A stretch of DNA of 63,710 nt, counting the filler, from Octopus bimaculoides (lineage: Eukaryota), in NCBI RefSeq assembly GCF_001194135.2. It is 8 parts of 8 records of this genome, joined end to end, with 100 filler letters (N's around TTAATTAATTAA, not from the genome) between each part and the next. Parts side by side here need not be neighbours in the genome. Positions count along the whole stretch, not along the records: positions 16,464 to 42,384 come from NC_068985.1; 7 more parts are not named here. One strand, 5' to 3'. Numbering within the stretch: the stretch's first letter is position 1; each line of letters starts with the position of its first letter. The notes below the pieces were generated by a model. The model worked only from the letters and a program-made list of their open reading frames with translations, made no database searches and had not been told where the DNA came from. The position numbers and the translations under genes are program-made. This document shows positions 19,781 through 40,195 of the stretch, one piece after another.

Positions 19781-19929
19781 TCTGATCAGTTGCTGATTGT
19801 CAACGATGATAGAGTGCAAGTGGCAATGGACAGCTATGCATATAATTAGGTTGATACTGCTGCCTTCTTCACACACAGACGTCGTAAAACATCATTTGAC
19901 TGACTGATACTTTTATTTATCAATGTTAC

Positions 19930-20145
19930 TTTCAAGTTTTGGCACAATGCCAGCAATTTTGGTGGTGGGAGGTGGGATAAGTCGATTACGTCGAACCCCA
20001 GTATGCAACTGGTACTTATTTTATCGACCTCGACAGGATGAAAGGCAAAGTCGACCTGAGCGGAATTTGAACTCAGTACATAAAGCCGGACGAAATGCCG
20101 CTAAGCATTTCGACCGGAGTACTAACGATTCTGCCCGCCCGCTCG
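19930..20145 (-). mobile_element. SINE family A copy
   Basis: Full head, core and TGTGCCAAAA..GAAA tail on the minus strand. Confidence 0.85.
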
Positions 20146-20934: not shown

Positions 20935-21480
20935 AACTGCTAGAAATTTTGCAACAAGACTGGCAATTCTGAGAGGAAGGTGAAGCCGGTGCAAAACTGA
21001 CAATAATTTTATCAACCTCAAAAGGATGAAAACAAAAGTCAACCTTGGCGAAAATTAAACACATAGCGTAAAGGTTCGGAAGAAATACCACAAAACATTT
21101 TGTCCGGCGCAGTAACAATTCCGCCAATCTGTCGCTCTGAAATCATTTCTTATATAGATACAGTCACAACTTCGGAGAAGTTTAATTGTTGAAATTGACC
21201 CTAGTACTTGAAGGTTAGTTAATTTTATGAAATTCGAAAGTAATGTTGACCTTGGTGAAACTTTATAACAATAATAATAATCCTTTCTACTATAAGCACA
21301 AGGCCTCAAATTTGAGGGAAGGGAGCAAGTCGATTACATCAACTCCAGTACTTGACTGGTACTTAATTTATCGATTTCGAAAAGATGAAAGGCAAAATCG
21401 AAGTCGGTGGAATTTAAACTCAGAACGTAAAGACGGGAGAAATACCGGTACGCATTTTGCTCGGCGTGCCAACAATTCTA
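20935..21480 (-). mobile_element. Cluster of three SINE A-related copies
   Basis: Copy at 20935-21135, degenerate copy at 21140-21260, and a subfamily copy at 21290-21480 with an (AAT)n tail. Confidence 0.75.
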
Positions 21481-21485
21481 CCACC

Positions 21486-21523
<38 letters not shown>

Positions 21524-21773
21524 CAATGATCAAATTGAAAACATTAATTCCATTCTACAACTCATTTGTGTTTTAAGTGAGGTTATATTGAATACATTTA
21601 ATCCAGAATTAATTTAATATCTTGTAGTTGTCGAGACATATTCATTACATTGCACTTGTCTCAGTATTTGCTTGAAATTTACGTGGTTTTAATTAATTTT
21701 AATTAATGATGTACCGAGTTGGTTGTAGAAGCAACAGAGCTAGACCTGTAGTTTAGTAACTAAAATCATATTC

Positions 21774-22158
21774 GTGGAGGCGCAGTGGCACAGTGGTTAG
21801 GGCAGCGGACTCGCGGTCATAGGATCGCGGTTTCGATTCCCACACCGGGCGTTGTGAGTGTTTATTGAGCGAAAACACCTAAAGCTCCACGAGGCTCCGG
21901 CAGGGGATGGTGGCGAACCCTGATGCATTCTTTCACCACAACTTTCTCTCACTCTTACTTCCTGTTTCTGTTGTGCCTGTAATTCAAAGGGTCAGCCTTG
22001 TCACACTGTGTCACGCTGAATATCCCCGAGAACTACATTAAGGGTACACGTGTCTGTGGAGTGCTCAGCCACTTGCACGTTAATTTCACGAGCAGGCTGT
22101 TCCGTTGATCGGATCAACTGGAACCCTCGACGTCGTAAGCGACGGAGTGCCAACAACA
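21774..22158 (+). mobile_element. Full-length tRNA-derived SINE family D
   Basis: A box TGGCACAGTGG, B-box-like GGTTTCGATTCCC, (AAC)n tail, imperfect TSD AAAATCA(T/C)ATT. Confidence 0.8.
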
Positions 22159-23624: not shown

Positions 23625-23840
23625 AAAGGCGCAAGTGTAGCTTTGTACTAAGAAGCTTCCTTCTCAACCATATGGTTCTGGGTTCAGTCCCACTGCGTAG
23701 CACCTTGGGCGGGCTGATCAAAGCCTTGTAAGNNNNNNNNNNNNNNNNNNNNNNNNNNNNNNNNNNNNNNNNNNNNNNNNNNNNNNNNNNNNNNNNNNNN
23801 NNNNNNNNNNNNNNNNNNNNNNNNNNNNNNNNNNNNNNNN

Positions 23841-25519: not shown

Positions 25520-25925
25520 TATTGATTTCAAATTTTGGCACAAGGTCATCAAGTTCGGAGAAGTGAGCCGATTAACCGACCCCAGTGCTCAAATGATACT
25601 TATTTTATTGACACTGAAAGTATGAGATGTAATGTCGACCTCTGTGGAATTTGAATTCAGAGCGTAAAGACGGACGAAATGCCGCTAAGCATTTTGCCTG
25701 GCGTGCTAACGGTTCTGCCATCTCGCTGCCTTAATATCAGCTGATATACTGGTTTCAAATTTCGGCACAAGGCCAGCAATTTTGGGAGAGATGGTAAGTC
25801 GATCACATCGATCCTAGTAATCAACTATTTATTTTATAATCTCCAAAATGTATTTGAACTCGGAATGTAAAGGTGAACGAAATGCTGTAAAGTATTTTGC
25901 TCAACGTGCTAACAACCCTGCCAGG
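25520..25925 (-). mobile_element. Two tandem SINE family A copies
   Basis: Both show the TTTCAAATTT(T/C)GGCACAAGG tail and the head on the minus strand. Confidence 0.8.
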
Positions 25926-26760: not shown

Positions 26761-27339
26761 GTATATATCAACCAACAATAAGTAACAANNNNNNNNNNNN
26801 NNNNNNNNNNNNNNNNNNNNNNNNNNNNNNNNNNNNNNNNNNNNNNNNNNNNNNNNNNNNNNNNNNNNNNNNNNNNNNNNNNNNNNNNNNNNNNNNNNNN
26901 NNNNNNNNNNNNNNNNNNNNNNNNNNNNNNNNNNNNNNNNNNNNNNNNNNNNNNNNNNNNNNNNNNNNNNNNNNNNNNNNNNNNNNNNNNNNNNNNNNNN
27001 NNNNNNNNNNNNNNNNNNNNNNNNNNNNNNNNNNNNNNNNNNNNNNNNNNNNNNNNNNNNNNNNNNNNNNNNNNNNNNNNNNNNNNNNNNNNNNNNNNNN
27101 NNNNNNNNNNNNNNNNNNNNNNNNNNNNNNNNNNNNNNNNNNNNNNNNNNNNNNNNNNNNNNNNNNNNNNNNNNNNNNNNNNNNNNNNNNNNNNNNNNNN
27201 NNNNNNNNNNNNNNNNNNNNNNNNNNNNNNNNNNNNNNNNNNNNNNNNNNNNNNNNNNNNNNNNNNNNNNNNNNNNNNNNNNNNNNNNNNNNNNNNNNNN
27301 NNNNNNNNNNNNNNNNNNNNNNNNNNNNNNNNNNNNNNN

Positions 27340-28789: not shown

Positions 28790-29165
28790 CATCCATACCT
28801 TAAAGTAAATTGTGCTAACAGTTACCCAAAATTCATTGTGCGAAAGTGCCTTTGTATGCTTGTAGGCATCTCCAGAGTCTTCCAGAAATTCTATTAATGC
28901 TTTCATTAGTCTACAGAATAGACAGATTCCTTGGAGCAGAGACTGCATCTCCTGGAAATTATATTGCATGGTTTCACGTGCCTTACTATGGACCACTTTA
29001 TGCTGTACTTCATTTTATCCTTCAGTCGCGATACAAAATCGGCCAAAGATATTGAATGTCTTTTATTGATTATCTTAAAGCTGTCGACATGGTTACGATA
29101 ACGATTCTTAAATGAATCAGCCGTCTGCCCAATGTAAACATACGGACCCCACCACCGCTTGTGTT
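28790..29165 (-). mobile_element. Penelope-like element GIY-YIG endonuclease remnant
   Basis: YIGQTADSFKNRYRNH..F..SLADFV..LK..YSIKWSIV..C.LC..E is the typical C-terminus of a Penelope GIY-YIG domain. The AT-rich 29.3-30.8 kb stretch may be the decayed RT. Confidence 0.85.
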
Positions 29166-29168
29166 CAC

Positions 29169-29210
<42 letters not shown>

Positions 29211-31723
29211 AGATTTGTACTCATACAAAGATCAATGGACATTTTGATTTTTCTCTGCATTTATGAGCATTTATCGTATTTATTTGTATATAAGGTGATA
29301 TATTTGTATACAAGTTAACCTAAAAAATTCAGATATAAAGGTTTCTTCGTTTGCTATACATGGAAGATGATTTAACACAGACGTCTCTTATGTAGCTCTA
29401 CATATATTTCAAATATGGTTTCAGTAAAATACCTAAAAATTATTCTGTCGAGGGGTTTCAAATGGTGGGCTTGTCACTACTGGTGTTAATTTTAAACCAT
29501 TTGTATGAAGAACATGTAAAGAAACAAGCAACAATCCTTTACTGACATCATTTTATAGTCTTGCTTATGGGGAATTTTGGTAATCTACACAATTGATTTG
29601 CATTGCATTTCAAATAAAGTTCACCAGAATCACGTAGCCTTTAGTAATTATTTCCAAAATAGTTTCTCCTTTAATTATTTCTAAATCCTTTCTCCCATTA
29701 TTATTTTCAAACATGTTTCTCCCGTAATTGTTCATTGCTCGTTGTGAAAACTGATTAATCCTCGATTTAGATGTTTCTCTACTTCACAACAATTGGTTTT
29801 ATTTCCTTGAGTGATTTGTAAATCTGTATATAGATTGGTTTCTGTTAAATTCAACTTTCACATTTCCGTTGAACATTACTTCGGTATTTCTTATGAATTT
29901 CTAAAGCTCGATTCATCTTGTGTTTATTTTACGAATTCTGTATAAAACACTATTTTAGTTTTAATTTTTCATGGATGTATTTTCCGAAGAATAATCTTCT
30001 TGAAAGTTCTTTTTGCAACTCCAAAAACGATTATCACTTTACTTTAATCATTGAAGCGAAATAATTTCCTTGTTTTCACATTCTTCTTTCCATTTTTCAC
30101 AGATATTTTCAACAGTGTGTCTTTTGTACTATCTTGGATACTTCAATGAGCATTTCTTCATCAATAGTAGCTCTATTCTATTCTGAAATTTTCTAGAGCT
30201 ATTCTTTAGATGTTCTGATTCGTCTTAAACTGGTTTGATATATAATTTTCTAACGAGAATTATCGGTGTTAAATTAATCCATCTTTCAAATATGCCAACT
30301 TTATAACTATCTTCACTTATTTCAAACTGAAAATATGCAGTAATGAAGGTTCATGTTTTAGACGAGGCTAATATGGCTTTAATTGTTGACCGAGTTGCAA
30401 TCTCATTTCTTATGACGGTTGTCTATGTTTTTGTTGAAATTCTTGATTCATGAATACATTCCGAAAAAGTTCTGCATAAACGACATAAATTCACACTAAT
30501 TTACTTAAAATTTATTCTCTTTTCCTCTTTATTAACTTCTCTAGCAAAGTAGTGTAGCTTTTCTTTTTCGGCTATTGACAAGTTTCGAGCTAACTGCAAT
30601 CGGTTCTTTTAAAATATTTTCATTTGTTGCTTTTTAGATTTGTTCATTTTTTTTTACACATTTTCTTTCCTTCTTTGGTAGTTAATACAAAAATATATAA
30701 AATATAGATCGCAATATATAGAAAAATAAAATATATAGAAAAATGTTATAAAATGAAGAAAATGAACAATTCTTTTTCTATGACAATTAACTGAATTATT
30801 CTAAAATACATTATTAAAATCAAATTGTTGTAAAAATACATTATTAAATACCGGTTTCACTTCTTATGAGAGAGTCATTATTATGTCCATGTATAATGTC
30901 TGCATCTTAGCGTTCATTTATGATAAGATATACTATAGTTTACCAAGCCCCGTTATTTATATATATATAATGTGTGTGTGTGTGCATGTGCGTATGTATA
31001 TGAAAAGATGTTTTCCTAGGCTTAAAATGCAGTAACATAGTTCTGTATAGAACATCCACGTTATAGTGGCAAAAAAAAACACTACTATCTAGTACCGTTA
31101 CTACATATATCTCTTTTAGAGATTTTAGAACTAGCTGCTTTGCTCGCACGCACGCACACACACACACACACACACACACATGTATGTATGTNNNNNNNNN
31201 NATATATATATATGCATTTTGAGCAATCACCCTATTTCTATTTCCTCCTGTCTACTTAAATATGTGGTTACTTTTAGAAATGTATCACTTTTTCAACTTC
31301 AAGTTCAGCGCAAGTCAAGATTTGAACTTCTTTAATCCACAAACAGACGGCTGACCTTTCGTTGCGATGGTTGGTGCATCACACTATTCTGCGACAACGA
31401 AGTACCGCTACTTCTACAATTTTATTGCACCAGGGGCTTCGTTCAGACAGGATCAGTTACGAATCTTCTGTCCCCTGCGCGGTTGCTTCCGGCGTCAATG
31501 CCGAATGTGAAAAGACGAATAACAACAAACTATAAAATGAAATAATTCAACTACGAGTTGACAGCCATATTATTATATATTATTAGTTCAAGTGTACGAA
31601 CAAGTAAACATTTGCTGATACAAAGTTCTGGAAACTAAAATTAAAATAATAAAAAAATTATCGAACAAAGCTGAAATACATGAAGATTACAATTTTAATA
31701 TACTTTCAACTAACCATCAAGTA

Positions 31724-33344: not shown

Positions 33345-33712
33345 TAAATTCCACTGAGGACGACTTTGCCTTTCATCTTTCTTAGATCGTAAAACAAGCA
33401 CCTGTCAAGCACCGAGAGTATAAGTAATTGATAACTACCTACTTCCAAATGTACTGCTTTAAAGAAAGTATTATAAAGTTTTGCGTGAAAGACGGTGAAC
33501 CACAGAATTAGCGGGATAAAAATCATTTGGTCCGGTGCGGTAACGATTCCGCCAATCTATCGCTCCAAACAATGTCTTATATAGATACAGTCGTAAATTT
33601 GGAGGAGAGATTTAAACGTGGAAATTGAACCCAGAACCTGAAAAGGCAGGTTATTTTATCGAACTCGAAAGTGATGTTGATCTCGATGAGACTTGAAGTG
33701 AGGACGTGATGC

Positions 33713-33860: not shown

Positions 33861-34640
33861 TAAAAATAAAATGAATGTTATAACGTAAAAAATGGAAATG
33901 GAACCACTCGCCTCACTTACGAATGGCCTCATTTTCTTCTTTTTAAATCCTGAACCAGGGTTAATTTATTAACAGTTAAAATTAGTAGAATTTACTCAGT
34001 ATACCATTCGTCTTCCTTCCAATAATTGGTTATTACCATCATTAAAAAAAAAGGAATCCTTATAATAATACTTCTTATGTAGATAGCTGCAGAGTAACGT
34101 AGCGAACCATGTTCTTTAGATATTTTTTGTAGCAAACATCTTATATAAGTAACTCATTATTTATATTTCCTTTTTACCTGATTTTAGAAATGGTTTAATC
34201 TGTCTTAAAATAATGGAATTGCCACCAGTAACACTTATATAGCTATCTTTCTGGTGGTTTTGTATTTTAGTAATATTTTACAAAATAACCTATGCAATAT
34301 CGATAAACAAAAACGAAACAGCTTGACAATTCCTTTAATGTAATTATAACAAAAAAGATACAGACATTGTTTGTTGCTAAAAATAAGCCTCCTTTTGTAT
34401 AAAAAGGTAATTCGAGAAAAAAACAACAAAAAAAAAAAGACACTGCTAGCTGCCTCGGTATTGGAAATTTATTGAGTAAGTACCGAGCTGTTTTGTTTTG
34501 GTTGTACAAAATAGTTGATTGCAAAGATGGGTTTCCGGAGATGGTGTTAATACTGTTGTGGAAGTCGAGTGTTTGTTTCAGAAAATACTTTTATGCAAAA
34601 CAAACCAATTAACCAGATACCCCACCCCCACCGGTAGAGA

Positions 34641-36851
34641 ATGTCGAAGTCGCTACTGAATGTTTATAAACAGCAAAACCCGGACGCATCTTGTCAACTA
34701 AGTAAATCGACTCTTGGCTGTGTTCCTAAATTAAATAACAGAAACAATGACAACTTCGAACAGGATAATGGAAGCGATGGCTCCGTTGGTGATCGGTTTC
34801 GTAGTCATACAATTGGTGAACGAATTAACGAAGCCATTTGGGAAAATTGTCGAAGAAGTATTGGTGAGCCACTAAACAATTCCAGGGTTACTGACAGAAG
34901 CAGCAACTATGGTTCAACAAACTCGAGAACATTGTATGGGAAAGCATATGTCGACAAAAATCCTTCGATCCCAACAGCGACAGAATCAAAACAATCAGGG
35001 ATAACTACTAAACATATATGTGAACCTAAGACTGAACCTTCAGTAGAGCAAACCGATCGGCCAGATCGTTTGAATATCAATAATTCGCAAACAGAAATAT
35101 CTCCCCTAAATGCAAACACAAAGGAAGAAATGCAGTCAATCAATCGGCATTTTGCTCCTAATATGTTACAAAACACTGTAGCCAATAAAACTGCAGCCTT
35201 ACCTGATGTCGGGTTAGCCGAGTCGAAACGTTTCCCTTCCGATGATCCCGAAAGCAGCCAAACACTACATGTGGTCCTACTGGATGTGTCTAACCCTAAT
35301 ACGCATCAGAAAAAGAGAGAGATGAAAGATTTTAGCAGTCTTACGACAGCTGGTCCGAATTTGTTAGAACACCAATCAGACTCACAATCGAACGGGAATT
35401 TAAATAATGTGTCAAAAGATCCGAGTGAGCAATTCATTAGATCCAGAAAATGCGTAAAAAATATCGAACACAACAACAATAACTATAATAATTTTCAAAG
35501 AAGTGAGGATAATGAGAAAAAATTCAACGGTGATTTAAAACCTGGAGTTGAATATGGAAATAAGACGTCCTTTAATATGCCTGCTGTATTTATGAATTCT
35601 TCATCTACTAGTAGAGGGGACAATGCTGGCCCGTCTAATTTCTGGCAGCCTGATTTAGTTGCAATGCAAGATGATCAAACGTTAGAGCAAGTTCCTATCA
35701 ATAAAAAACCACGCCAAACGGTTAACGATCAGTTTAGTGTCTGTGTACCTTCTCCAGCTCGCTCACCTTTCAAAAGTGTGTTGCCAAGCAATAATTTGCA
35801 AATCGAGCCAGTAATGAAGAAAGCTACCGTTTCAGTAACTAATAAAGAAGCTATTGCTGTCAAAGAGTCTATGGAATGCACTACAGTTGGATATCGGTCA
35901 GTGCCATCGGGCAATTTCACCGCTTCTCAAACTGGAAAAAACCCAGCTATTTCAGGAAATTCAGCATTCAGACCAAACCTGGTTACGTATCTGGTTTTAA
36001 ACCAAGAGAATAAAGCTGTCATGAGTAACTGTATTTTGCCGCAACCAGATAATTTATCTCAAGGTTTAAATTTTCCTTCGCAAGAAATGCATCGTCAGTT
36101 AATAGAACACACGGGACAAATACAGACGAATCCAGTACAAAACTATCTAACTGTGGCTAAAACAGATCAACTGATTCCGTGCATGGTAAGTCGTCCAAAT
36201 GTGTTCCAAGGTGTTTGTAGGCAAGCGAATCAAGCTAATAGTTTGAGTCACTGTAATGGAGAGAATAATTTGATACAATTTCGAAACCAAATATTATGGC
36301 AGCATCTGCAAGAGCTGCATAGAAAACAGGCAATCGAGTGTCAACTACCGTCATGTCACTATAGCCAAAACACTCAGGACTCAAATGCTTCACATGTCGA
36401 ACCATGTAACGAAATAAAGAATCCTATAAACGCACGATCACCACATGTTTCTGATAGTAATTTTATTAAAAAATTTCGGATCCTATTTCCGACTTTGAAA
36501 GCGTCATTGCGTAAAGTATTTAAAACTTCTTCTGAAGCAGTCTCTCAGAATATTGCAGGAAATCATTCGGAGAAAATGTTTATAAAGGACTTTGAAAATT
36601 CCCTTGAAGATTTAATGGGAATTTTGGATAGGGCTGAGATTTATTTGCAATCTGCGAAAGAAATCCAGATGCAGTCATTTCATGATACCTGGTTTACGCC
36701 TTACAAATGTCAAGACCAAATACCGTCTAAAACCTACTCGGACTACTGCAATGTGGCGATCAAGCAAATTAAGGTCGTCCAAGAAATCCACGATGCTATG
36801 TTATTTTTGAATAGTTTCAATAATAATAATGATAAAGAACTGAACAAATGA
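34641..36851 (+). CDS. MED29-like: Intronless 736-aa protein: ~600-aa low-complexity N-terminus plus a C-terminal MED29/Intersex-like domain (aa ~605-721, nt 36453-36803)
   Basis: Three colinear blocks match remembered human MED29: DSNFIKKFRILFPTLKASLRKVFK..QN vs DFDPVQRYKMLIPQLKESLQTLMK..QN; FENSLEDLMGILDRAEIYLQSAKEIQMQS vs FDKCLEEFYALCDQLELCLRLAHECLSQS; YSDYCNVAIKQIKVVQEIHDAML vs YPQYLAVIKAQISCAKDIHTALL. An in-frame TAG lies two codons upstream of the ATG. Possible 5' UTR intron at 34476-34581. Confidence 0.8.
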   Translation: MSKSLLNVYKQQNPDASCQLSKSTLGCVPKLNNRNNDNFEQDNGSDGSVGDRFRSHTIGERINEAIWENCRRSIGEPLNNSRVTDRSSNYGSTNSRTLYGKAYVDKNPSIPTATESKQSGITTKHICEPKTEPSVEQTDRPDRLNINNSQTEISPLNANTKEEMQSINRHFAPNMLQNTVANKTAALPDVGLAESKRFPSDDPESSQTLHVVLLDVSNPNTHQKKREMKDFSSLTTAGPNLLEHQSDSQSNGNLNNVSKDPSEQFIRSRKCVKNIEHNNNNYNNFQRSEDNEKKFNGDLKPGVEYGNKTSFNMPAVFMNSSSTSRGDNAGPSNFWQPDLVAMQDDQTLEQVPINKKPRQTVNDQFSVCVPSPARSPFKSVLPSNNLQIEPVMKKATVSVTNKEAIAVKESMECTTVGYRSVPSGNFTASQTGKNPAISGNSAFRPNLVTYLVLNQENKAVMSNCILPQPDNLSQGLNFPSQEMHRQLIEHTGQIQTNPVQNYLTVAKTDQLIPCMVSRPNVFQGVCRQANQANSLSHCNGENNLIQFRNQILWQHLQELHRKQAIECQLPSCHYSQNTQDSNASHVEPCNEIKNPINARSPHVSDSNFIKKFRILFPTLKASLRKVFKTSSEAVSQNIAGNHSEKMFIKDFENSLEDLMGILDRAEIYLQSAKEIQMQSFHDTWFTPYKCQDQIPSKTYSDYCNVAIKQIKVVQEIHDAMLFLNSFNNNNDKELNK

Positions 36852-37119
36852 ACATATCTGAATCAATGTTAACTTTTTTGTTTAAAGTTTTTATTATAAC
36901 ATTTTGGTTTTCGTTATTTTCCAGATCAATCAAACAATATTAGTAATATTGATCTGCTGAATGATAGTAATATTGGTGTATCTTGATAGGATCATTTTGC
37001 CAATGAGAAACACACGCACTGACAGAATATTCATCCCAATACACAGAATCTACTTTAATACCCGATTTCACACACGAAAAATAAACTTGCAAAACTCCTA
37101 CAAAAACTAAGGTAATATT

Positions 37120-37485
37120 GATTTCAAATTTTGGTACAAGGCCGGCAATTTTGGGGGTAGGGTAAATCAGCTGGCACGTATTTTATCGATCCCGAAAAGA
37201 TGAAAGGCAAAGTTGACCTCGGCGAAATTTGAAATTGGAACGTACAGACAGACAAAATGCCGCTAAGCGTGCTAACAATTCTACCAGCTTGACGACTTCG
37301 GGGAGAAAAAGGTAATGTTAGTAATGCTTGGTGGCATTTTGTTCGTCTTTGTTCTTTGTTCAAATTCCACCGAGGTCAACTTTACTTTTCATTCTTTTGG
37401 GGCCGATAATATAGATAGCAGTTGAGTACCGGAATCGATGTAATCGATCTACCTCTCCCCCCGAAATTGCTGGCATTGTGCCAAT
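37120..37485. mobile_element. Two SINE family A copies in opposite orientation
   Basis: Minus copy at 37120-37290 and plus copy at 37320-37485. Confidence 0.8.
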
Positions 37486-38066
37486 ATCGTGAAAAAGAAA
37501 GTATCTGGGATTTATGCCAAAAATACCACTCCATTTGTTTACTGAACTAATAAAAACGTGTTAATGTTGAATGAAACTATGCCTGCATAATATCTAAAAT
37601 TATTGATTTTATTACCTAAGGTTGGTATATTTTTGAGAAAACTAGTCTGTTACCTACTTGTATTTATTTATACAATGTCTATGGCTGATTTATAAATGAA
37701 CATTTCTATTTTATTAGGAAAAGGAAACCTAACATTTTTTTATAAACGAATAAAATTTAAGTTTGAAAATGTCAACCAAAATACTAGTCTTTTTTCGTTT
37801 TTCCTTATTTGCATTTGTTTTGCTATTAATGTGATGTAGGAGACTGGCTTCCAGTAAGATAAATAGTTTACTATCCTGTTTAGATTGACTGGGGAAGTCA
37901 ATTGATTCTGAGAGATACTTTACAAATGTATGCCCTTTATCCTAATTAAACGCAAATACTTCTGTCACAGTTTTCTGTCAATTGAAATTTGAAAAAAAAA
38001 AAAAAATATATATATAGTCGACGTGAGAAGTTATAATTGCTCCGGTTGTTAAACTTTAACTATTGG

Positions 38067-38269
38067 TTTCAAATTTGACACAAGGCTAGCAACTTCGTGG
38101 GAGAGAGTAAGTCGATTATATCGCCCCCAGTACCAACTGGTACTTATTTTATCGTCACTGAAAGGGACGAAAGGAAAAGTCGGTGTATTTTGAACTGAGA
38201 ACGTAGCGGCAGACGAAATACTGCTAAGCATTTCGCCCGGCGTGCTCCCGATTCTGTCAGCTGGCCGCC
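38067..38269 (-). mobile_element. SINE family A copy with a 21-bp TSD
   Basis: TTGTTAAACTTTAACTATTGG at 38046-38066 and 38270-38290. Confidence 0.9.
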
Positions 38270-38974
38270 TTGTTAAACTTTAACTATTGGCAATATAATT
38301 CAACACGTCAGCTATGTTCTACCAAGTAATTATAAGACGATCTGTACCAATGATATCTTCAATTAGAAAGATTTTGACAAATAAAAAATTCGTTTATATA
38401 TATGAAAATAACTTGGACCATCTAATTGTTGTAGGGGCGCCGTCGTGGCACATGGGTACCTTTAACGCTCTGGGACCTGATACAGCCTGTCCGACATCAG
38501 ATTCCTTCCAGAAGAGAGAAATTCATGCCGGAAGAGAGAAGATTCGACTATAGTTGATAGTGGGATTTGAACTTGCAATGTAGCGAGCCTGAACCATTAC
38601 TGTAAGGCAATTTATTCGAATCAGTAAAGCCTCTGCCAATCGGACTTCCTATATGTATGTTTTCGTATATGCGTGTGTCTAAATACATGTGTGTGTGTGT
38701 CTGATCAACTAATTTTACATTCATACACAGATAAATGAAACATGCTTATATATGTATGCGATTTAAAGAGAAAATGTAGAAAAAATTTAAATAAGGAATT
38801 TGATTAATTTCAAAAATGCAAATTTTATTTCCTTTGAGAAGTTTTGCAGTCTTGAAATCGCCATAGAAATTCTGTCTTTTCCTTTACATTTTCTTTCTTC
38901 TGTCTGTTCCTACATTCAGAACTGGGGAGGCCTGAAATGAAGTTGATTATCAAAATATAGCTCCGTATTAACTA

Positions 38975-39268
38975 TTAGTTTCAAATTTTGGCACAAGGCC
39001 AGCAATGCCAGGAGAGGAGTGAAGTCGATTACAACTGGTACTTATTTTATCGACTCCGAAAGGATGAAAGGCAAAGTTGACCTCGGTGGCGTGTTGACTC
39101 TGAATATTAACACGCACGAAATGCTGCTAAGCATTTTGTCTGACGTGTTAACGATTCTACCAGATCGCTGTCTTCTCCATACTAAATATTGATTTGAAAT
39201 TTTGGCACAAGGCCAGTAATTTGGAGCGAGGGGGTAAGTCGATTCTGTTGACACTAGTATTCAACTGG
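38975..39268 (-). mobile_element. SINE family A copy plus a 3' fragment
   Basis: Core and TTTCAAATTTTGGCACAAGGCCAG tail, the tail occurring twice. Confidence 0.8.
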
Positions 39269-39545: not shown

Positions 39546-40195
39546 AATTTAAAAAGAAAAAAAGCAAAACGAAGCTATGGAAATTAAATACGCTTTACAC
39601 TGCTTAATCAGCCAAAGGAGTAAATATAANNNNNNNNNNNNNNNNNNNNNNNNNNNNNNNNNNNNNNNNNNNNNNNNNNNNNNNNNNNNNNNNNNNNNNN
39701 NNNNNNNNNNNNNNNNNNNNNNNNNNNNNNNNNNNNNNNNNNNNNNNNNNNNNNNNNNNNNNNNNNNNNNNNNNNNNNNNNNNNNNNNNNNNNNNNNNNN
39801 NNNNNNNNNNNNNNNNNNNNNNNNNNNNNNNNNNNNNNNNNNNNNNNNNNNNNNNNNNNNNNNNNNNNNNNNNNNNNNNNNNNNNNNNNNNNNNNNNNNN
39901 NNNNNNNNNNNNNNNNNNNNNNNNNNNNNNNNNNNNNNNNNNNNNNNNNNNNNNNNNNNNNNNNNNNNNNNNNNNNNNNNNNNNNNNNNNNNNNNNNNNN
40001 NNNNNNNNNNNNNNNNNNNNNNNNNNNNNNNNNNNNNNNNNNNNNNNNNNNNNNNNNNNNNNNNNNNNNNNNNNNNNNNNNNNNNNNNNNNNNNNNNNNN
40101 NNNNNNNNNNNNNNNNNNNNNNNNNNNNNNNNNNNNNNNNNNNNNNNNNNNNNNNNNNNNNNNNNNNNNNNNNNNNNNNNNNNNNNNNNNNNNNN

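What the first reader, a model, noticed from the sequence alone, without database searches (positions are those of the whole stretch)
34641..36851. Divergent, intronless MED29/Intersex paralogue: candidate lineage-specific variant Mediator subunit
Seen: a 2.2-kb uninterrupted ORF in a stop-rich genome, whose C-terminal ~120 aa reproduce the three helical blocks of MED29 with correct spacing but have lost usually invariant residues (CDQ to LDR, EC to EI). Known: MED29 is a ~200-aa metazoan Mediator subunit, generally single-copy; its Drosophila orthologue Intersex is the cofactor of female Doublesex. Inference: a retroposed, fast-evolving duplicate that could build a tissue- or sex-specific Mediator, or compete with canonical MED29. 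The ORF track or a whole-protein search could easily leave it as uncharacterised.
Basis: partly seen in the sequence, partly recalled or inferred. Interest (0 to 1): 0.85.

Follow-up and report, generated by a model that had tools for sequence, protein, structure and literature searches.

The report
Octopus-only long MED29 paralogue gene
Octopuses carry, besides their normal MED29 gene, a second, fast-evolving but selectively maintained copy. It fuses a MED29-type three-helix domain to a 600-residue disordered arm, so it may be a variant subunit of the Mediator transcription complex, though its expression and partners are untested.

Summary
Window 34641-36851 (+) is one 736-codon ORF in Octopus bimaculoides chromosome record CM046605.1. 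Residues 609-721 match Pfam Med29 above the curated cut-off (42.4 bits, E=1e-10) and match canonical MED29 in a profile-profile comparison (hhalign 99%).

It is a paralogue. A canonical 159-aa MED29 lies on another chromosome record (CM046609.1), and Argonauta hians also has both genes.

The long gene is intact in O. vulgaris at the syntenic locus, in a third octopod (five haplotypes) and in Argonauta. All 18 indels are in frame, against 10 of 34 in the flanks. dN/dS is about 0.5. Between Octopus and Argonauta the domain's dN is about 5 times that of canonical MED29.

The C and Q of the CDQ motif, invariant in 15 canonical sequences, are L and R/K in all four paralogues.

"Intronless, therefore retroposed" does not follow. 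The canonical cephalopod MED29 CDS is also a single exon, whereas a limpet and a chiton have three introns inside the domain.

The sex- or tissue-specific role, expression and Mediator binding are untested. Nothing was found outside Octopoda. This is a real, moderately interesting new variant of a known family.

The parts
34641..36851 (+). Complete single-exon CDS of the long MED29 paralogue (736 aa plus TGA)
   Evidence: ORF. (called gene in O. bimaculoides GCA_001194135.2 CM046605.1, Pfam Med29). Intact orthologous ORFs in O. vulgaris, a third octopod and Argonauta.
34635..34637 (+). In-frame TAG two codons upstream of the ATG; it fixes the start of the CDS
   Evidence: Sequence read directly. 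The same TAG-NNN-ATG arrangement is in the third octopod contig L003.
34570..34581 (+). Candidate 3' splice acceptor (TGTTTGTTTCAG) 60 nt upstream of the ATG; if used, an upstream exon would be 5' UTR only (inferred, no RNA evidence)
   Evidence: Sequence. The TTTCAG|AAAATAC junction is also present in L003, but the whole flank is about 84% conserved, so conservation alone is not informative.
34641..36440 (+). N-terminal extension of about 600 aa, rich in Asn/Ser/Gln, predicted disordered, absent from canonical MED29
   Evidence: No Pfam or PDB match. AF2 pLDDT below 35 throughout, from a shallow 4-sequence alignment. Composition. dN/dS 0.49-0.57. Aligns with the Argonauta protein from about aa 148 onward.
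35223..35345 (+). Most conserved block of the extension (aa 195-235, FPSDDPESSQTLHVVLLDVSNPNTHQKKREMKDF), a candidate short linear motif plus basic cluster
   Evidence: QTLHVVLL-VS-P is invariant in all four octopod proteins including Argonauta. The surrounding window aa 151-300 has the lowest dN/dS, 0.19-0.28.
36255..36341 (+). Predicted helix aa 539-567 (NLIQFRNQILWQHLQELHRKQ...) just before the Med29 domain, partly conserved in Argonauta
   Evidence: AF2 secondary structure, at low pLDDT. Conserved L544 Q546 F547 Q550 L552 Q554 Q557 K562.
36465..36803 (+). Med29 domain (aa 609-721), three helices
   Evidence: Pfam PF11568 at 42.4 bits. hhalign 99%. AF2 helices at model residues 15-46, 51-92 and 106-141. 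Foldseek top hits are MED29 chains.
36561..36683 (+). Helix 2 of the domain. It holds LDR (aa 662-664, nt 36624-36632) in place of the canonical CDQ, plus a cluster of paralogue-specific fixed residues (N653 M659 G660 L662 A665 Q670 K673 Q676 M677)
   Evidence: these residues are identical in all four paralogues and never seen in 15 canonical MED29.
37549..37554 (+). Candidate polyadenylation signal AATAAA about 700 nt after the stop (another at 37080-37085); inferred only
   Evidence: An ACTAATAAA motif is also seen at the matching place of L003. No transcript data.

Best explanation
This is a functional protein-coding gene: an octopod-restricted paralogue of Mediator subunit MED29 (Intersex in Drosophila, Med2 in yeast).

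Origin. It most likely arose by duplication of a cephalopod MED29 gene that had already lost its introns. This happened before Argonauta and Octopus split. The copy now lies on a different chromosome record from the canonical gene.

Architecture. It gained a largely disordered N-terminal arm of about 600 aa that carries a few conserved short motifs. It kept a C-terminal three-helix MED29 domain. The hydrophobic and structural core of that domain is retained (P617, L619, K620, S622, L623, F651, E656, D663, E666, L669, A672, Y699, Q709). Helix 2 has a re-modelled surface that is itself conserved among the paralogues. Helix 3 is relaxed.

Proposed mechanism (inferred, not shown). The C-terminal domain docks into the helical bundle that MED29 normally forms with its Mediator neighbours (MED27/MED28/MED30). 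It either replaces or competes with canonical MED29. The long disordered arm then gives a subset of Mediator complexes a new surface for transcription factors or cofactors. This resembles the Candida albicans TLO (Med2) paralogues, which pair a Mediator-anchoring domain with variable extensions.

How sure. 'Selectively maintained MED29 paralogue': about 0.95. 'Acts by entering Mediator in MED29's place': about 0.45.
For: Identity: Pfam Med29 above the gathering score; PDB MED29 hits; hhalign 99.0%, E=3e-18; AF2 three-helix model whose best PDB matches are MED29 chains. The only non-self hits of the paralogue profile among 1.84 billion representatives are MED29-type proteins: those that carry a source name are called MED29, and the rest align as canonical MED29.

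Paralogy: canonical 159-aa MED29 is at CM046609.1 against the window's CM046605.1. Argonauta hians has both, on different scaffolds.

Origin within cephalopods: in the sample aligned, LEDL and FTP are shared only with cephalopod canonical MED29, as is the loss of all three ancestral introns (against 52, 53, 59). In the NJ tree the paralogues are monophyletic at 100% and group with cephalopod canonical MED29 at 56%.

Selection:
- The ORF is intact in 4 species and in 5 haplotypes of the third.
- 18 of 18 ORF indels are multiples of 3, against 10 of 34 in the adjacent flanks.
- dN/dS is 0.47-0.51 overall, with z = 4.0-6.2 against neutrality.
- dN/dS is 0.20-0.59 in the Med29 core and 0.19-0.28 in aa 151-300.
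- 44 positions of the C-terminal alignment (aa 595-736) are invariant among the paralogues. At 13 of them the residue is never seen in canonical MED29, and 10 of those 13 cluster in or next to helix 2.

Precedent: C. albicans TLO/Med2 paralogues are incorporated into Mediator (PMC9713401). Bourbon 2008 equates Med2 with MED29 (PMC2475620).
Against: - There is no expression or interaction data of any kind.
- C662 and Q664, invariant in every canonical MED29 sampled, are replaced. Six of 27 highly conserved domain positions are lost in all paralogues.
- Helix 3 is only 17% identical between Octopus and Argonauta paralogues, against 87% for the canonical gene. The Mediator interface may therefore be gone.
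- The Pfam score is 30-42 bits against 123-130 for canonical MED29, and the Argonauta paralogue gets no Pfam hit.
- The nucleotide identity of the ORF is barely above that of the flanks.
- The 90% cluster of the O. vulgaris protein has no O. sinensis member, although the canonical O. sinensis MED29 is annotated. This weakly hints that NCBI's evidence-based annotation did not call the long gene there.
- The disorder call for the N-terminus rests on a 4-sequence alignment.
Confidence: 0.45

Rival explanations
1. A neofunctionalised MED29-derived protein that no longer sits in Mediator. The three-helix domain has been re-tuned to a different partner (or titrates a MED29 partner as a free decoy), and the gene's function lies outside the core complex.
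For: Invariant C and Q of CDQ are lost. Ten paralogue-specific fixed residues lie in or beside helix 2, and helix 3 is very poorly conserved. The domain's dN is 5 times that of the canonical gene. Pfam scores are weak and the Argonauta protein has no hit. Some C. albicans TLO-gamma proteins were not found in Mediator (PMC9713401).
Against: The core positions that define the fold and the first two helices are retained over the whole octopod radiation. hhalign still gives 99%. No alternative partner is suggested by any data.
Confidence: 0.35
2. A sex-specific cofactor in the manner of Drosophila Intersex, which partners Doublesex.
For: Only the family relationship: Drosophila IX is MED29 (PMC2475620).
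Against: There are no expression data. The gene is on the 127-Mb record CM046605.1, whereas the O. bimaculoides Z is chromosome 17 (PMC10925132). The canonical MED29, which would be the IX orthologue, is present and highly conserved.
Confidence: 0.05
3. A non-functional retrocopy or decaying pseudogene whose ORF is open by chance.
For: ORF nucleotide identity is similar to that of the flanks. dN/dS in some windows is near 1, for example aa 451-600 between O. bimaculoides and O. vulgaris at 1.13. No expression evidence.
Against: The ORF is intact in four species that span a saturated dS of at least 1.3 and in five haplotypes of one species. 18 of 18 indels are in frame against 10 of 34 in the flanks. 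Overall dN/dS is significantly below 1 (z = 4.0-6.2).
Confidence: 0.03
4. It is the only MED29 of octopus: a derived orthologue, not a paralogue.
For: None.
Against: Canonical MED29 (159 aa, Pfam 130 bits) is encoded at CM046609.1 in the same assembly. It is also present in O. sinensis and Argonauta.
Confidence: 0.01

Closest known systems
Canonical metazoan MED29 (Drosophila Intersex; human MED29, PDB 7EMF chain 2; O. bimaculoides XP_014784275.1)
   Same: C-terminal three-helix Med29 domain with the same order and spacing. Retains P617, L619, K620, S622, L623, F651, E656, D663, E666, L669, A672, Y699 and Q709. In the sample aligned, it shares LEDL and FTP only with cephalopod MED29. The CDS is a single exon, like the cephalopod canonical gene.
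   Different: 736 aa instead of 159-240. A 600-aa disordered N-terminal arm. 27-34% identity in the domain. The invariant C and Q of CDQ are replaced. dN is 5 times higher. It lies on another chromosome record. Pfam scores 30-42 bits against 123-130.
Candida albicans TLO family (Med2 paralogues; Med2 is the fungal counterpart of MED29)
   Same: A lineage-specific duplication of the Med2/MED29 subunit that pairs a conserved Mediator-anchoring domain with a variable, partly prion-like or disordered extension (PMC9713401, PMC2475620).
   Different: [quoted passage not shown] Here there is a single old copy (dS with Argonauta is saturated), the Med29 domain is C-terminal, and the divergence is strong. 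Mediator incorporation has been shown for the TLO alpha and beta groups but is untested here.
Other animal Mediator subunit paralogues (MED12/MED12L, MED13/MED13L, CDK8/CDK19, nematode Med1 and Med27 pairs, fish Med30 pair)
   Same: Duplicated Mediator subunits thought to build alternative complexes (PMC2475620).
   Different: That survey of 20 animals reports no MED29 paralogue. Those paralogues keep the parental length and architecture.
Retrogenes (intronless mRNA-derived copies on another chromosome)
   Same: Lacks all three ancestral introns of the Med29 domain, and lies on a different chromosome record from the canonical gene.
   Different: The canonical gene in the same genome lacks the same introns, so the absence of introns cannot be attributed to retroposition of this copy. 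No poly(A) remnant or target-site duplication is recognisable.

Membership tests
MED29 (Pfam PF11568 Med29) | Sequence match to the family profile above the curated threshold | tested here: met
   42.4 bits against a cut-off of 25.2, E=1e-10, aa 609-721. The O. vulgaris and third-species orthologues score 30.6 and 37.5 bits, and Argonauta has no hit. hhalign against a canonical profile gives 99.0%.
MED29 (Pfam PF11568 Med29) | Three long helices in canonical order and spacing | tested here: met
   AF2 model with helices 15-46, 51-92 and 106-141, pLDDT 78. Foldseek ranks 1-3 are MED29 chains 8t9d_X, 8t1l_X and 7emf_2, with TM scores 0.51-0.62.
MED29 (Pfam PF11568 Med29) | Family-invariant residues, including the CDQ motif of helix 2 | tested here: not met
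   Of 27 domain positions conserved in at least 85% of 15 canonical sequences, 12 are kept in all four paralogues, 9 are kept in some, and 6 are lost in all. C662L and Q664R/K are among the losses, while D663 is kept.
MED29 (Pfam PF11568 Med29) | Small protein (about 160-240 aa) consisting of a short low-complexity N-terminus plus the domain | tested here: not met
   736 aa. The 600-aa extension has no detectable homology.
MED29 (Pfam PF11568 Med29) | Physical subunit of Mediator, bundled with MED27/MED28/MED30 | not testable with these tools
MED29 orthologue (single-copy gene of the species) | Being the species' only MED29, or the MED29 at the ancestral position | tested here: not met
   Canonical MED29 is on CM046609.1 in the same assembly. 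Paralogues and canonical sequences form separate clades at 100% and 95%.
Retrogene | Absence of the parental gene's introns | tested here: inconclusive
   All three introns seen in Patella and Liolophura MED29 are absent. They are equally absent from the canonical cephalopod genes.
Retrogene | Poly(A) remnant and target-site duplications at the insertion | tested here: inconclusive
   No flanking direct repeats bracket the gene. The A-run at about 37992-38006 is 1.1 kb past the stop, next to SINE-like repeats. Given the age of the gene, erosion is expected.
Retrogene | Location unlinked to the parent | tested here: met
   CM046605.1 against CM046609.1 in O. bimaculoides. Scaffolds 40 and 18 in Argonauta.
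Expressed, selectively maintained gene (as opposed to pseudogene) | ORF conservation, frame-preserving indels, dN/dS below 1 | tested here: met
Expressed, selectively maintained gene (as opposed to pseudogene) | Transcript evidence | not testable with these tools
   The Logan contigs that carry the third-species ORF are genomic: they end in (TA)n at both ends and are colinear with the window's flanks. No RNA data were accessible.

The most novel reading that the evidence does not exclude
Octopods build a second form of Mediator. In it a dedicated MED29-like subunit, maintained since before the Argonauta-Octopus split, anchors a 600-residue disordered arm to the position MED29 occupies in Mediator and recruits lineage-specific regulators in particular tissues, neural or gonadal. 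This would be the first MED29 paralogue described in an animal, and an animal counterpart of the Candida TLO system. A connected possibility is that the whole cephalopod MED29 repertoire descends from a retrocopy that replaced the ancestral four-exon gene.
Probability: 0.25. Interest if true: 0.6.

Novelty: new variant of a known kind. Interest (0 to 1): 0.45.

Why it matters
The Mediator core and tail subunits are mostly single-copy in animals. The 2008 survey of 20 animal genomes lists no MED29 paralogue (PMC2475620).

An old, constrained MED29 duplicate with a new 600-aa disordered arm would be a natural experiment in how a general coactivator gains lineage-specific input surfaces, in a clade known for regulatory and neural novelty. 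It also gives a concrete test case for whether the MED29 position in Mediator tolerates a variant subunit.

The side result has practical use. Cephalopod MED29 lost all three ancestral introns, so "intronless" cannot be used as a retrogene criterion in this family.

If the protein turns out not to bind Mediator, it is simply a fast-evolving orphan-like gene with a recycled helical domain, which is of modest interest.

Tried and rejected
1. The word-indexed protein search with the full protein and with a 4-sequence profile returned only the three Octopus-type proteins. Argonauta was found only by the exhaustive HMMER search.
2. A scan of JGI metagenome contigs for host-derived cephalopod DNA that encodes the paralogue found 338 pattern matches, none confirmed.
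3. I tested whether PAF1 lies next to MED29 in cephalopods, as it does head-to-head in Patella. A tblastx of the Patella Paf1 5' region against the window, L002 and L004-L007 gave nothing, but it also gave nothing against the Liolophura locus L009, so the test has no power.
4. Homology of the N-terminal 600 aa: only sub-threshold, chance-level Pfam hits (15.7 and 12.7 bits, well under their cut-offs) and nothing in PDB. These were disregarded.
5. Rfam on the whole piece gave no match.
6. Literature: no paper holds both MED29 and cephalopod.
7. The absence of the exact O. bimaculoides protein from Logan assemblies is not evidence against expression. The exact canonical O. bimaculoides MED29 is also found only in the NCBI assembly.
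8. The first NJ bootstrap with Biopython's calculator timed out. It was redone with my own distance code.
9. The ORF at 28906-29211 (-) looked GIY-YIG-like by eye, but it has no Pfam hit.
Full report
**1. What is in the sequence**

Window 34641-36851 (+) is one uninterrupted ORF of 736 codons, with an ATG start and a TGA stop. It is the only long ORF in the 26-kb piece. Every other ORF of 100 aa or more is either about 100-160 aa or runs through assembly gaps or microsatellites. At about 38% GC roughly one random codon in fifteen is a stop, so 736 open codons cannot be chance. An in-frame TAG lies two codons before the ATG, so the complete CDS is in one exon. A pyrimidine-rich ...TTTCAG at 34570-34581 could be a splice acceptor for a non-coding leader exon. 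That is inference only.

An exact-sequence look-up places the window in Octopus bimaculoides assembly GCA_001194135.2, chromosome record CM046605.1 (127.5 Mb), at about 119.57 Mb.

**2. Is the C-terminus really MED29?**

Yes.
- Pfam Med29 (PF11568) matches aa 609-721 over model positions 6-131 of 139, with E=1e-10 and 42.4 bits against a gathering score of 25.2.
- The only PDB sequences matched are human and mouse MED29: E=3e-5 with the single sequence and 3e-9 with a four-species profile.
- A profile of the octopod C-termini aligned to a profile of 15 canonical MED29 gives hhalign probability 99.0%, E=3e-18, over 119 columns.
- AlphaFold2 on a 21-sequence alignment gives three long helices at mean pLDDT 78. 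The three best Foldseek PDB matches are the MED29 chains of 8T9D, 8T1L and 7EMF, with TM scores 0.51-0.62.
- The exhaustive HMMER search with the paralogue profile over 1.84 billion representatives returned 15 proteins. Apart from the paralogues, those that carry a source name are called MED29, and the rest align as canonical MED29.

C and Q are invariant in all 15 canonical sequences I aligned, and they are L and R/K in all four paralogues; D is kept. "EC to EI" is not the loss of an invariant residue, because that Cys is A, T, V or M in mollusc MED29.

**3. Paralogue or orthologue?**

Paralogue.
- O. bimaculoides has a canonical MED29 (XP_014784275.1, 159 aa, Pfam 130 bits) on another chromosome record, CM046609.1.
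- O. sinensis has the canonical protein (97% identical). So does Argonauta hians (85%), and so do two unnamed cephalopod sources (67%, probably decapodiform by my inference).
- The long gene is present in O. vulgaris: 734 aa, 87% identical, at a syntenic locus with colinear flanks of about 86-92% identity and a neighbouring minus-strand gene in the same position.
- It is present in a third octopod known only from Logan genomic contigs: 669 aa, with five slightly different haplotypes, all intact.
- It is present in Argonauta hians (GAB1604838.1, "hypothetical protein"): 675 aa, a single ORF, on a different scaffold from its canonical MED29.

The duplication therefore predates the Argonauta-Octopus split. 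Synonymous sites between the two are saturated, with dS at least 1.3.

Nothing comparable was found outside Octopoda. This is a soft negative, because squid and Nautilus genomes could not be searched directly.

**4. Where did it come from?**

In an NJ tree of 123 domain columns the four paralogues are monophyletic (100%). The five cephalopod canonical sequences are monophyletic (95%). The two groups join each other with weak support (56%).

Two motifs, LEDL and FTP, are shared by the paralogues and cephalopod canonical MED29 and by no other MED29 in the alignment.

Patella vulgata and Liolophura sinensis MED29 have four coding exons, with three introns at the same positions inside the domain. 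The canonical MED29 CDS is a single exon in O. bimaculoides, Argonauta and the unnamed cephalopod.

All ancestral introns were therefore lost in cephalopod MED29 generally. This happened either by cDNA-mediated intron loss in place or by a retrocopy replacing the parent. The simplest history is that it happened before the duplication. The long copy's lack of introns is thus not evidence that it was itself retroposed. Its position on another chromosome record fits retroposition but also fits other mechanisms. No poly(A) or target-site remnants are visible.

**5. Is it under selection?**

Yes, although the selection is relaxed and uneven.
- Nei-Gojobori dN/dS is 0.50 (O. bimaculoides against O. 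vulgaris), 0.51 and 0.47 (each against the third species). pS exceeds pN at z = 4.0-6.2.
- The lowest values are in aa 151-300 (0.19-0.28) and in the Med29 core (0.20-0.59).
- ORF nucleotide identity (93.4% and 84.7%) is hardly above that of the flanks (85.7-92.3% and 80.6-84.3%). However, all 18 indels in the ORF are multiples of three, against 10 of 34 in the flanks.
- Between Octopus and Argonauta, dN is 0.38 in the paralogue's domain and 0.66 in the N-terminal arm, against 0.076 in the canonical domain. The paralogue's domain therefore evolves about five times faster than the canonical one.
- By helix, Octopus-Argonauta identity in the paralogue is 64% (helix 1), 57% (helix 2) and 17% (helix 3). 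The canonical values are 94%, 78% and 87%.
- Thirteen positions are fixed in all paralogues with a residue never seen in canonical MED29. Ten of them lie in or beside helix 2: N653, M659, G660, L662, A665, Q670, K673, Q676, M677, D682. This pattern points to a re-modelled but constrained surface, not to decay.

**6. The N-terminal 600 residues**

There is no Pfam or PDB homology. The composition is Asn/Ser/Gln-rich. AF2 pLDDT is below 35 throughout, but that prediction used only four sequences.

A few islands are conserved as far as Argonauta. The clearest is FPS..P..QTLHVVLL(D/N)VS.P followed by a basic cluster (aa 198-229). Others are RP.LV...L.QE (aa 444-456) and a predicted helix NL.QF..Q.L.Q..Q (aa 543-557). 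I read these as short linear motifs in a disordered arm. What they bind is unknown.

The Argonauta protein lacks the first 147 or so residues. It adds a 115-aa Asn/Asp-rich tail after the domain.

**7. Mechanism**

*Shown:* this is a conserved coding gene whose C-terminus has the MED29 fold and core.

*Inferred:* the domain still docks where MED29 docks, in the helical bundle with MED27/MED28/MED30 (established from the mammalian Mediator structures whose MED29 chains were matched). The disordered arm then supplies a new interaction surface and yields a variant Mediator. I put this at about 0.45.

The main rival, at about 0.35, is that the altered helix 2 and the loose helix 3 mean a new partner or a decoy role outside the complex.

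A Doublesex/Intersex-type sex role is unsupported. The Z chromosome of O. bimaculoides is chromosome 17 (PMC10925132), while the gene is on the 127-Mb record CM046605.1. Its chromosome number was not verified.

The pseudogene and sole-orthologue readings are refuted (sections 3 and 5).

**8. Comparison with what is known**

Bourbon's survey equates MED29 with yeast Med2. It lists animal paralogues for Med1, Med12, Med13, Cdk8, Med27 and Med30, but none for MED29. It also notes 14 Med2 paralogues in Candida albicans (PMC2475620).

Those TLO genes pair a Mediator-anchoring Med2 domain with variable extensions, some of them prion-like, and the alpha and beta types are found in Mediator (PMC9713401). 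That is the closest functional analogue. It differs in being recent, multi-copy and subtelomeric, with the domain at the N-terminus.

Databases already carry the O. vulgaris protein under an automatic MED29 name in UniRef. The library holds no paper with both MED29 and cephalopod.

**9. Verdict**

The retroposition argument is invalid as made, one of the two "lost invariant" motifs is wrong, and the functional proposals are untested.

I file this as a new variant of a known kind. It passes the sequence and fold tests for MED29 membership. It fails on the invariant residues and on architecture, and the defining biochemical property, being a Mediator subunit, could not be tested. Interest is moderate (0.45).

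Noticed in passing
L004:10001-10480 (O. bimaculoides CM046609.1), L007:3001-3486 (Argonauta), L006:3001-3486 (unnamed cephalopod, ENA ERZ21867824), compared with L008:2001-7579 (Patella) and L009:2001-8258 (Liolophura): The canonical cephalopod MED29 CDS is a single exon. The limpet and chiton genes have four coding exons with three introns at shared positions inside the Med29 domain. Cephalopod MED29 as a whole may therefore descend from a retrocopy or from cDNA-mediated intron loss.
   Followed up: partly
L008:1-1694 (-) and 2001-7579 (+): In Patella vulgata MED29 lies head-to-head with a Paf1 gene about 300 bp away. From memory the same two genes are neighbours in human. No Paf1 was detected within 10 kb of either octopus MED29 gene, but the test had no power.
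   Followed up: partly
window 37104-37430, 38040-38280, 38961-39250, 33346-33394; also about 19922-20142, 21269-21486, 25520-25837: A dispersed SINE-like repeat of about 170-290 nt (core TTTCAAATTTTGGCACAAGGCCAGCAAT ... GAAAGGCAAAGTTGACCTCGG) occurs in many copies and both orientations around the gene, including an inverted pair in the presumed 3' UTR. No copy lies inside the ORF. There is no Rfam or tRNA-type match at gathering score.
   Followed up: partly
window about 38916 to the end of the piece (minus strand); L001:14276-22211, L002:14250-22205: The downstream neighbour is a multi-exon gene on the minus strand (547-aa product, faint cNMP_binding hit). A minus-strand gene is called at the same relative place in O. 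vulgaris. In Argonauta the neighbour is on the + strand and was not shown to be the same gene.
   Followed up: no
L005:10001-12028 (Argonauta hians BAAFZT010000040.1): The Argonauta paralogue starts at the position that aligns with Octopus residue 148 or so. It carries an extra Asn/Asp-rich tail of about 115 aa after the Med29 domain, and it gets no Pfam Med29 hit at E<=0.01 although it aligns clearly.
   Followed up: partly
window 23733-23840, 26789-27339, 31192-31201, 39630-40195: Assembly gaps (runs of N) flanked by (TA)n, (CA)n or (TC)n microsatellites. They produce spurious long 'ORFs' full of X in the ORF list.
   Followed up: no
window 21534-22150 against L002:3547-3946 and 7580-7811: Upstream of the gene, the order of some conserved blocks differs between O. 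bimaculoides and O. vulgaris. Segments at 21.5-22.1 kb match places interleaved with blocks that map to 29-33 kb. This suggests insertions, transposed segments or assembly differences.
   Followed up: no
(protein clusters): The 90% cluster of the O. vulgaris long protein has no O. sinensis member, although O. sinensis canonical MED29 is annotated. The long gene may be unannotated in that RefSeq genome.
   Followed up: no
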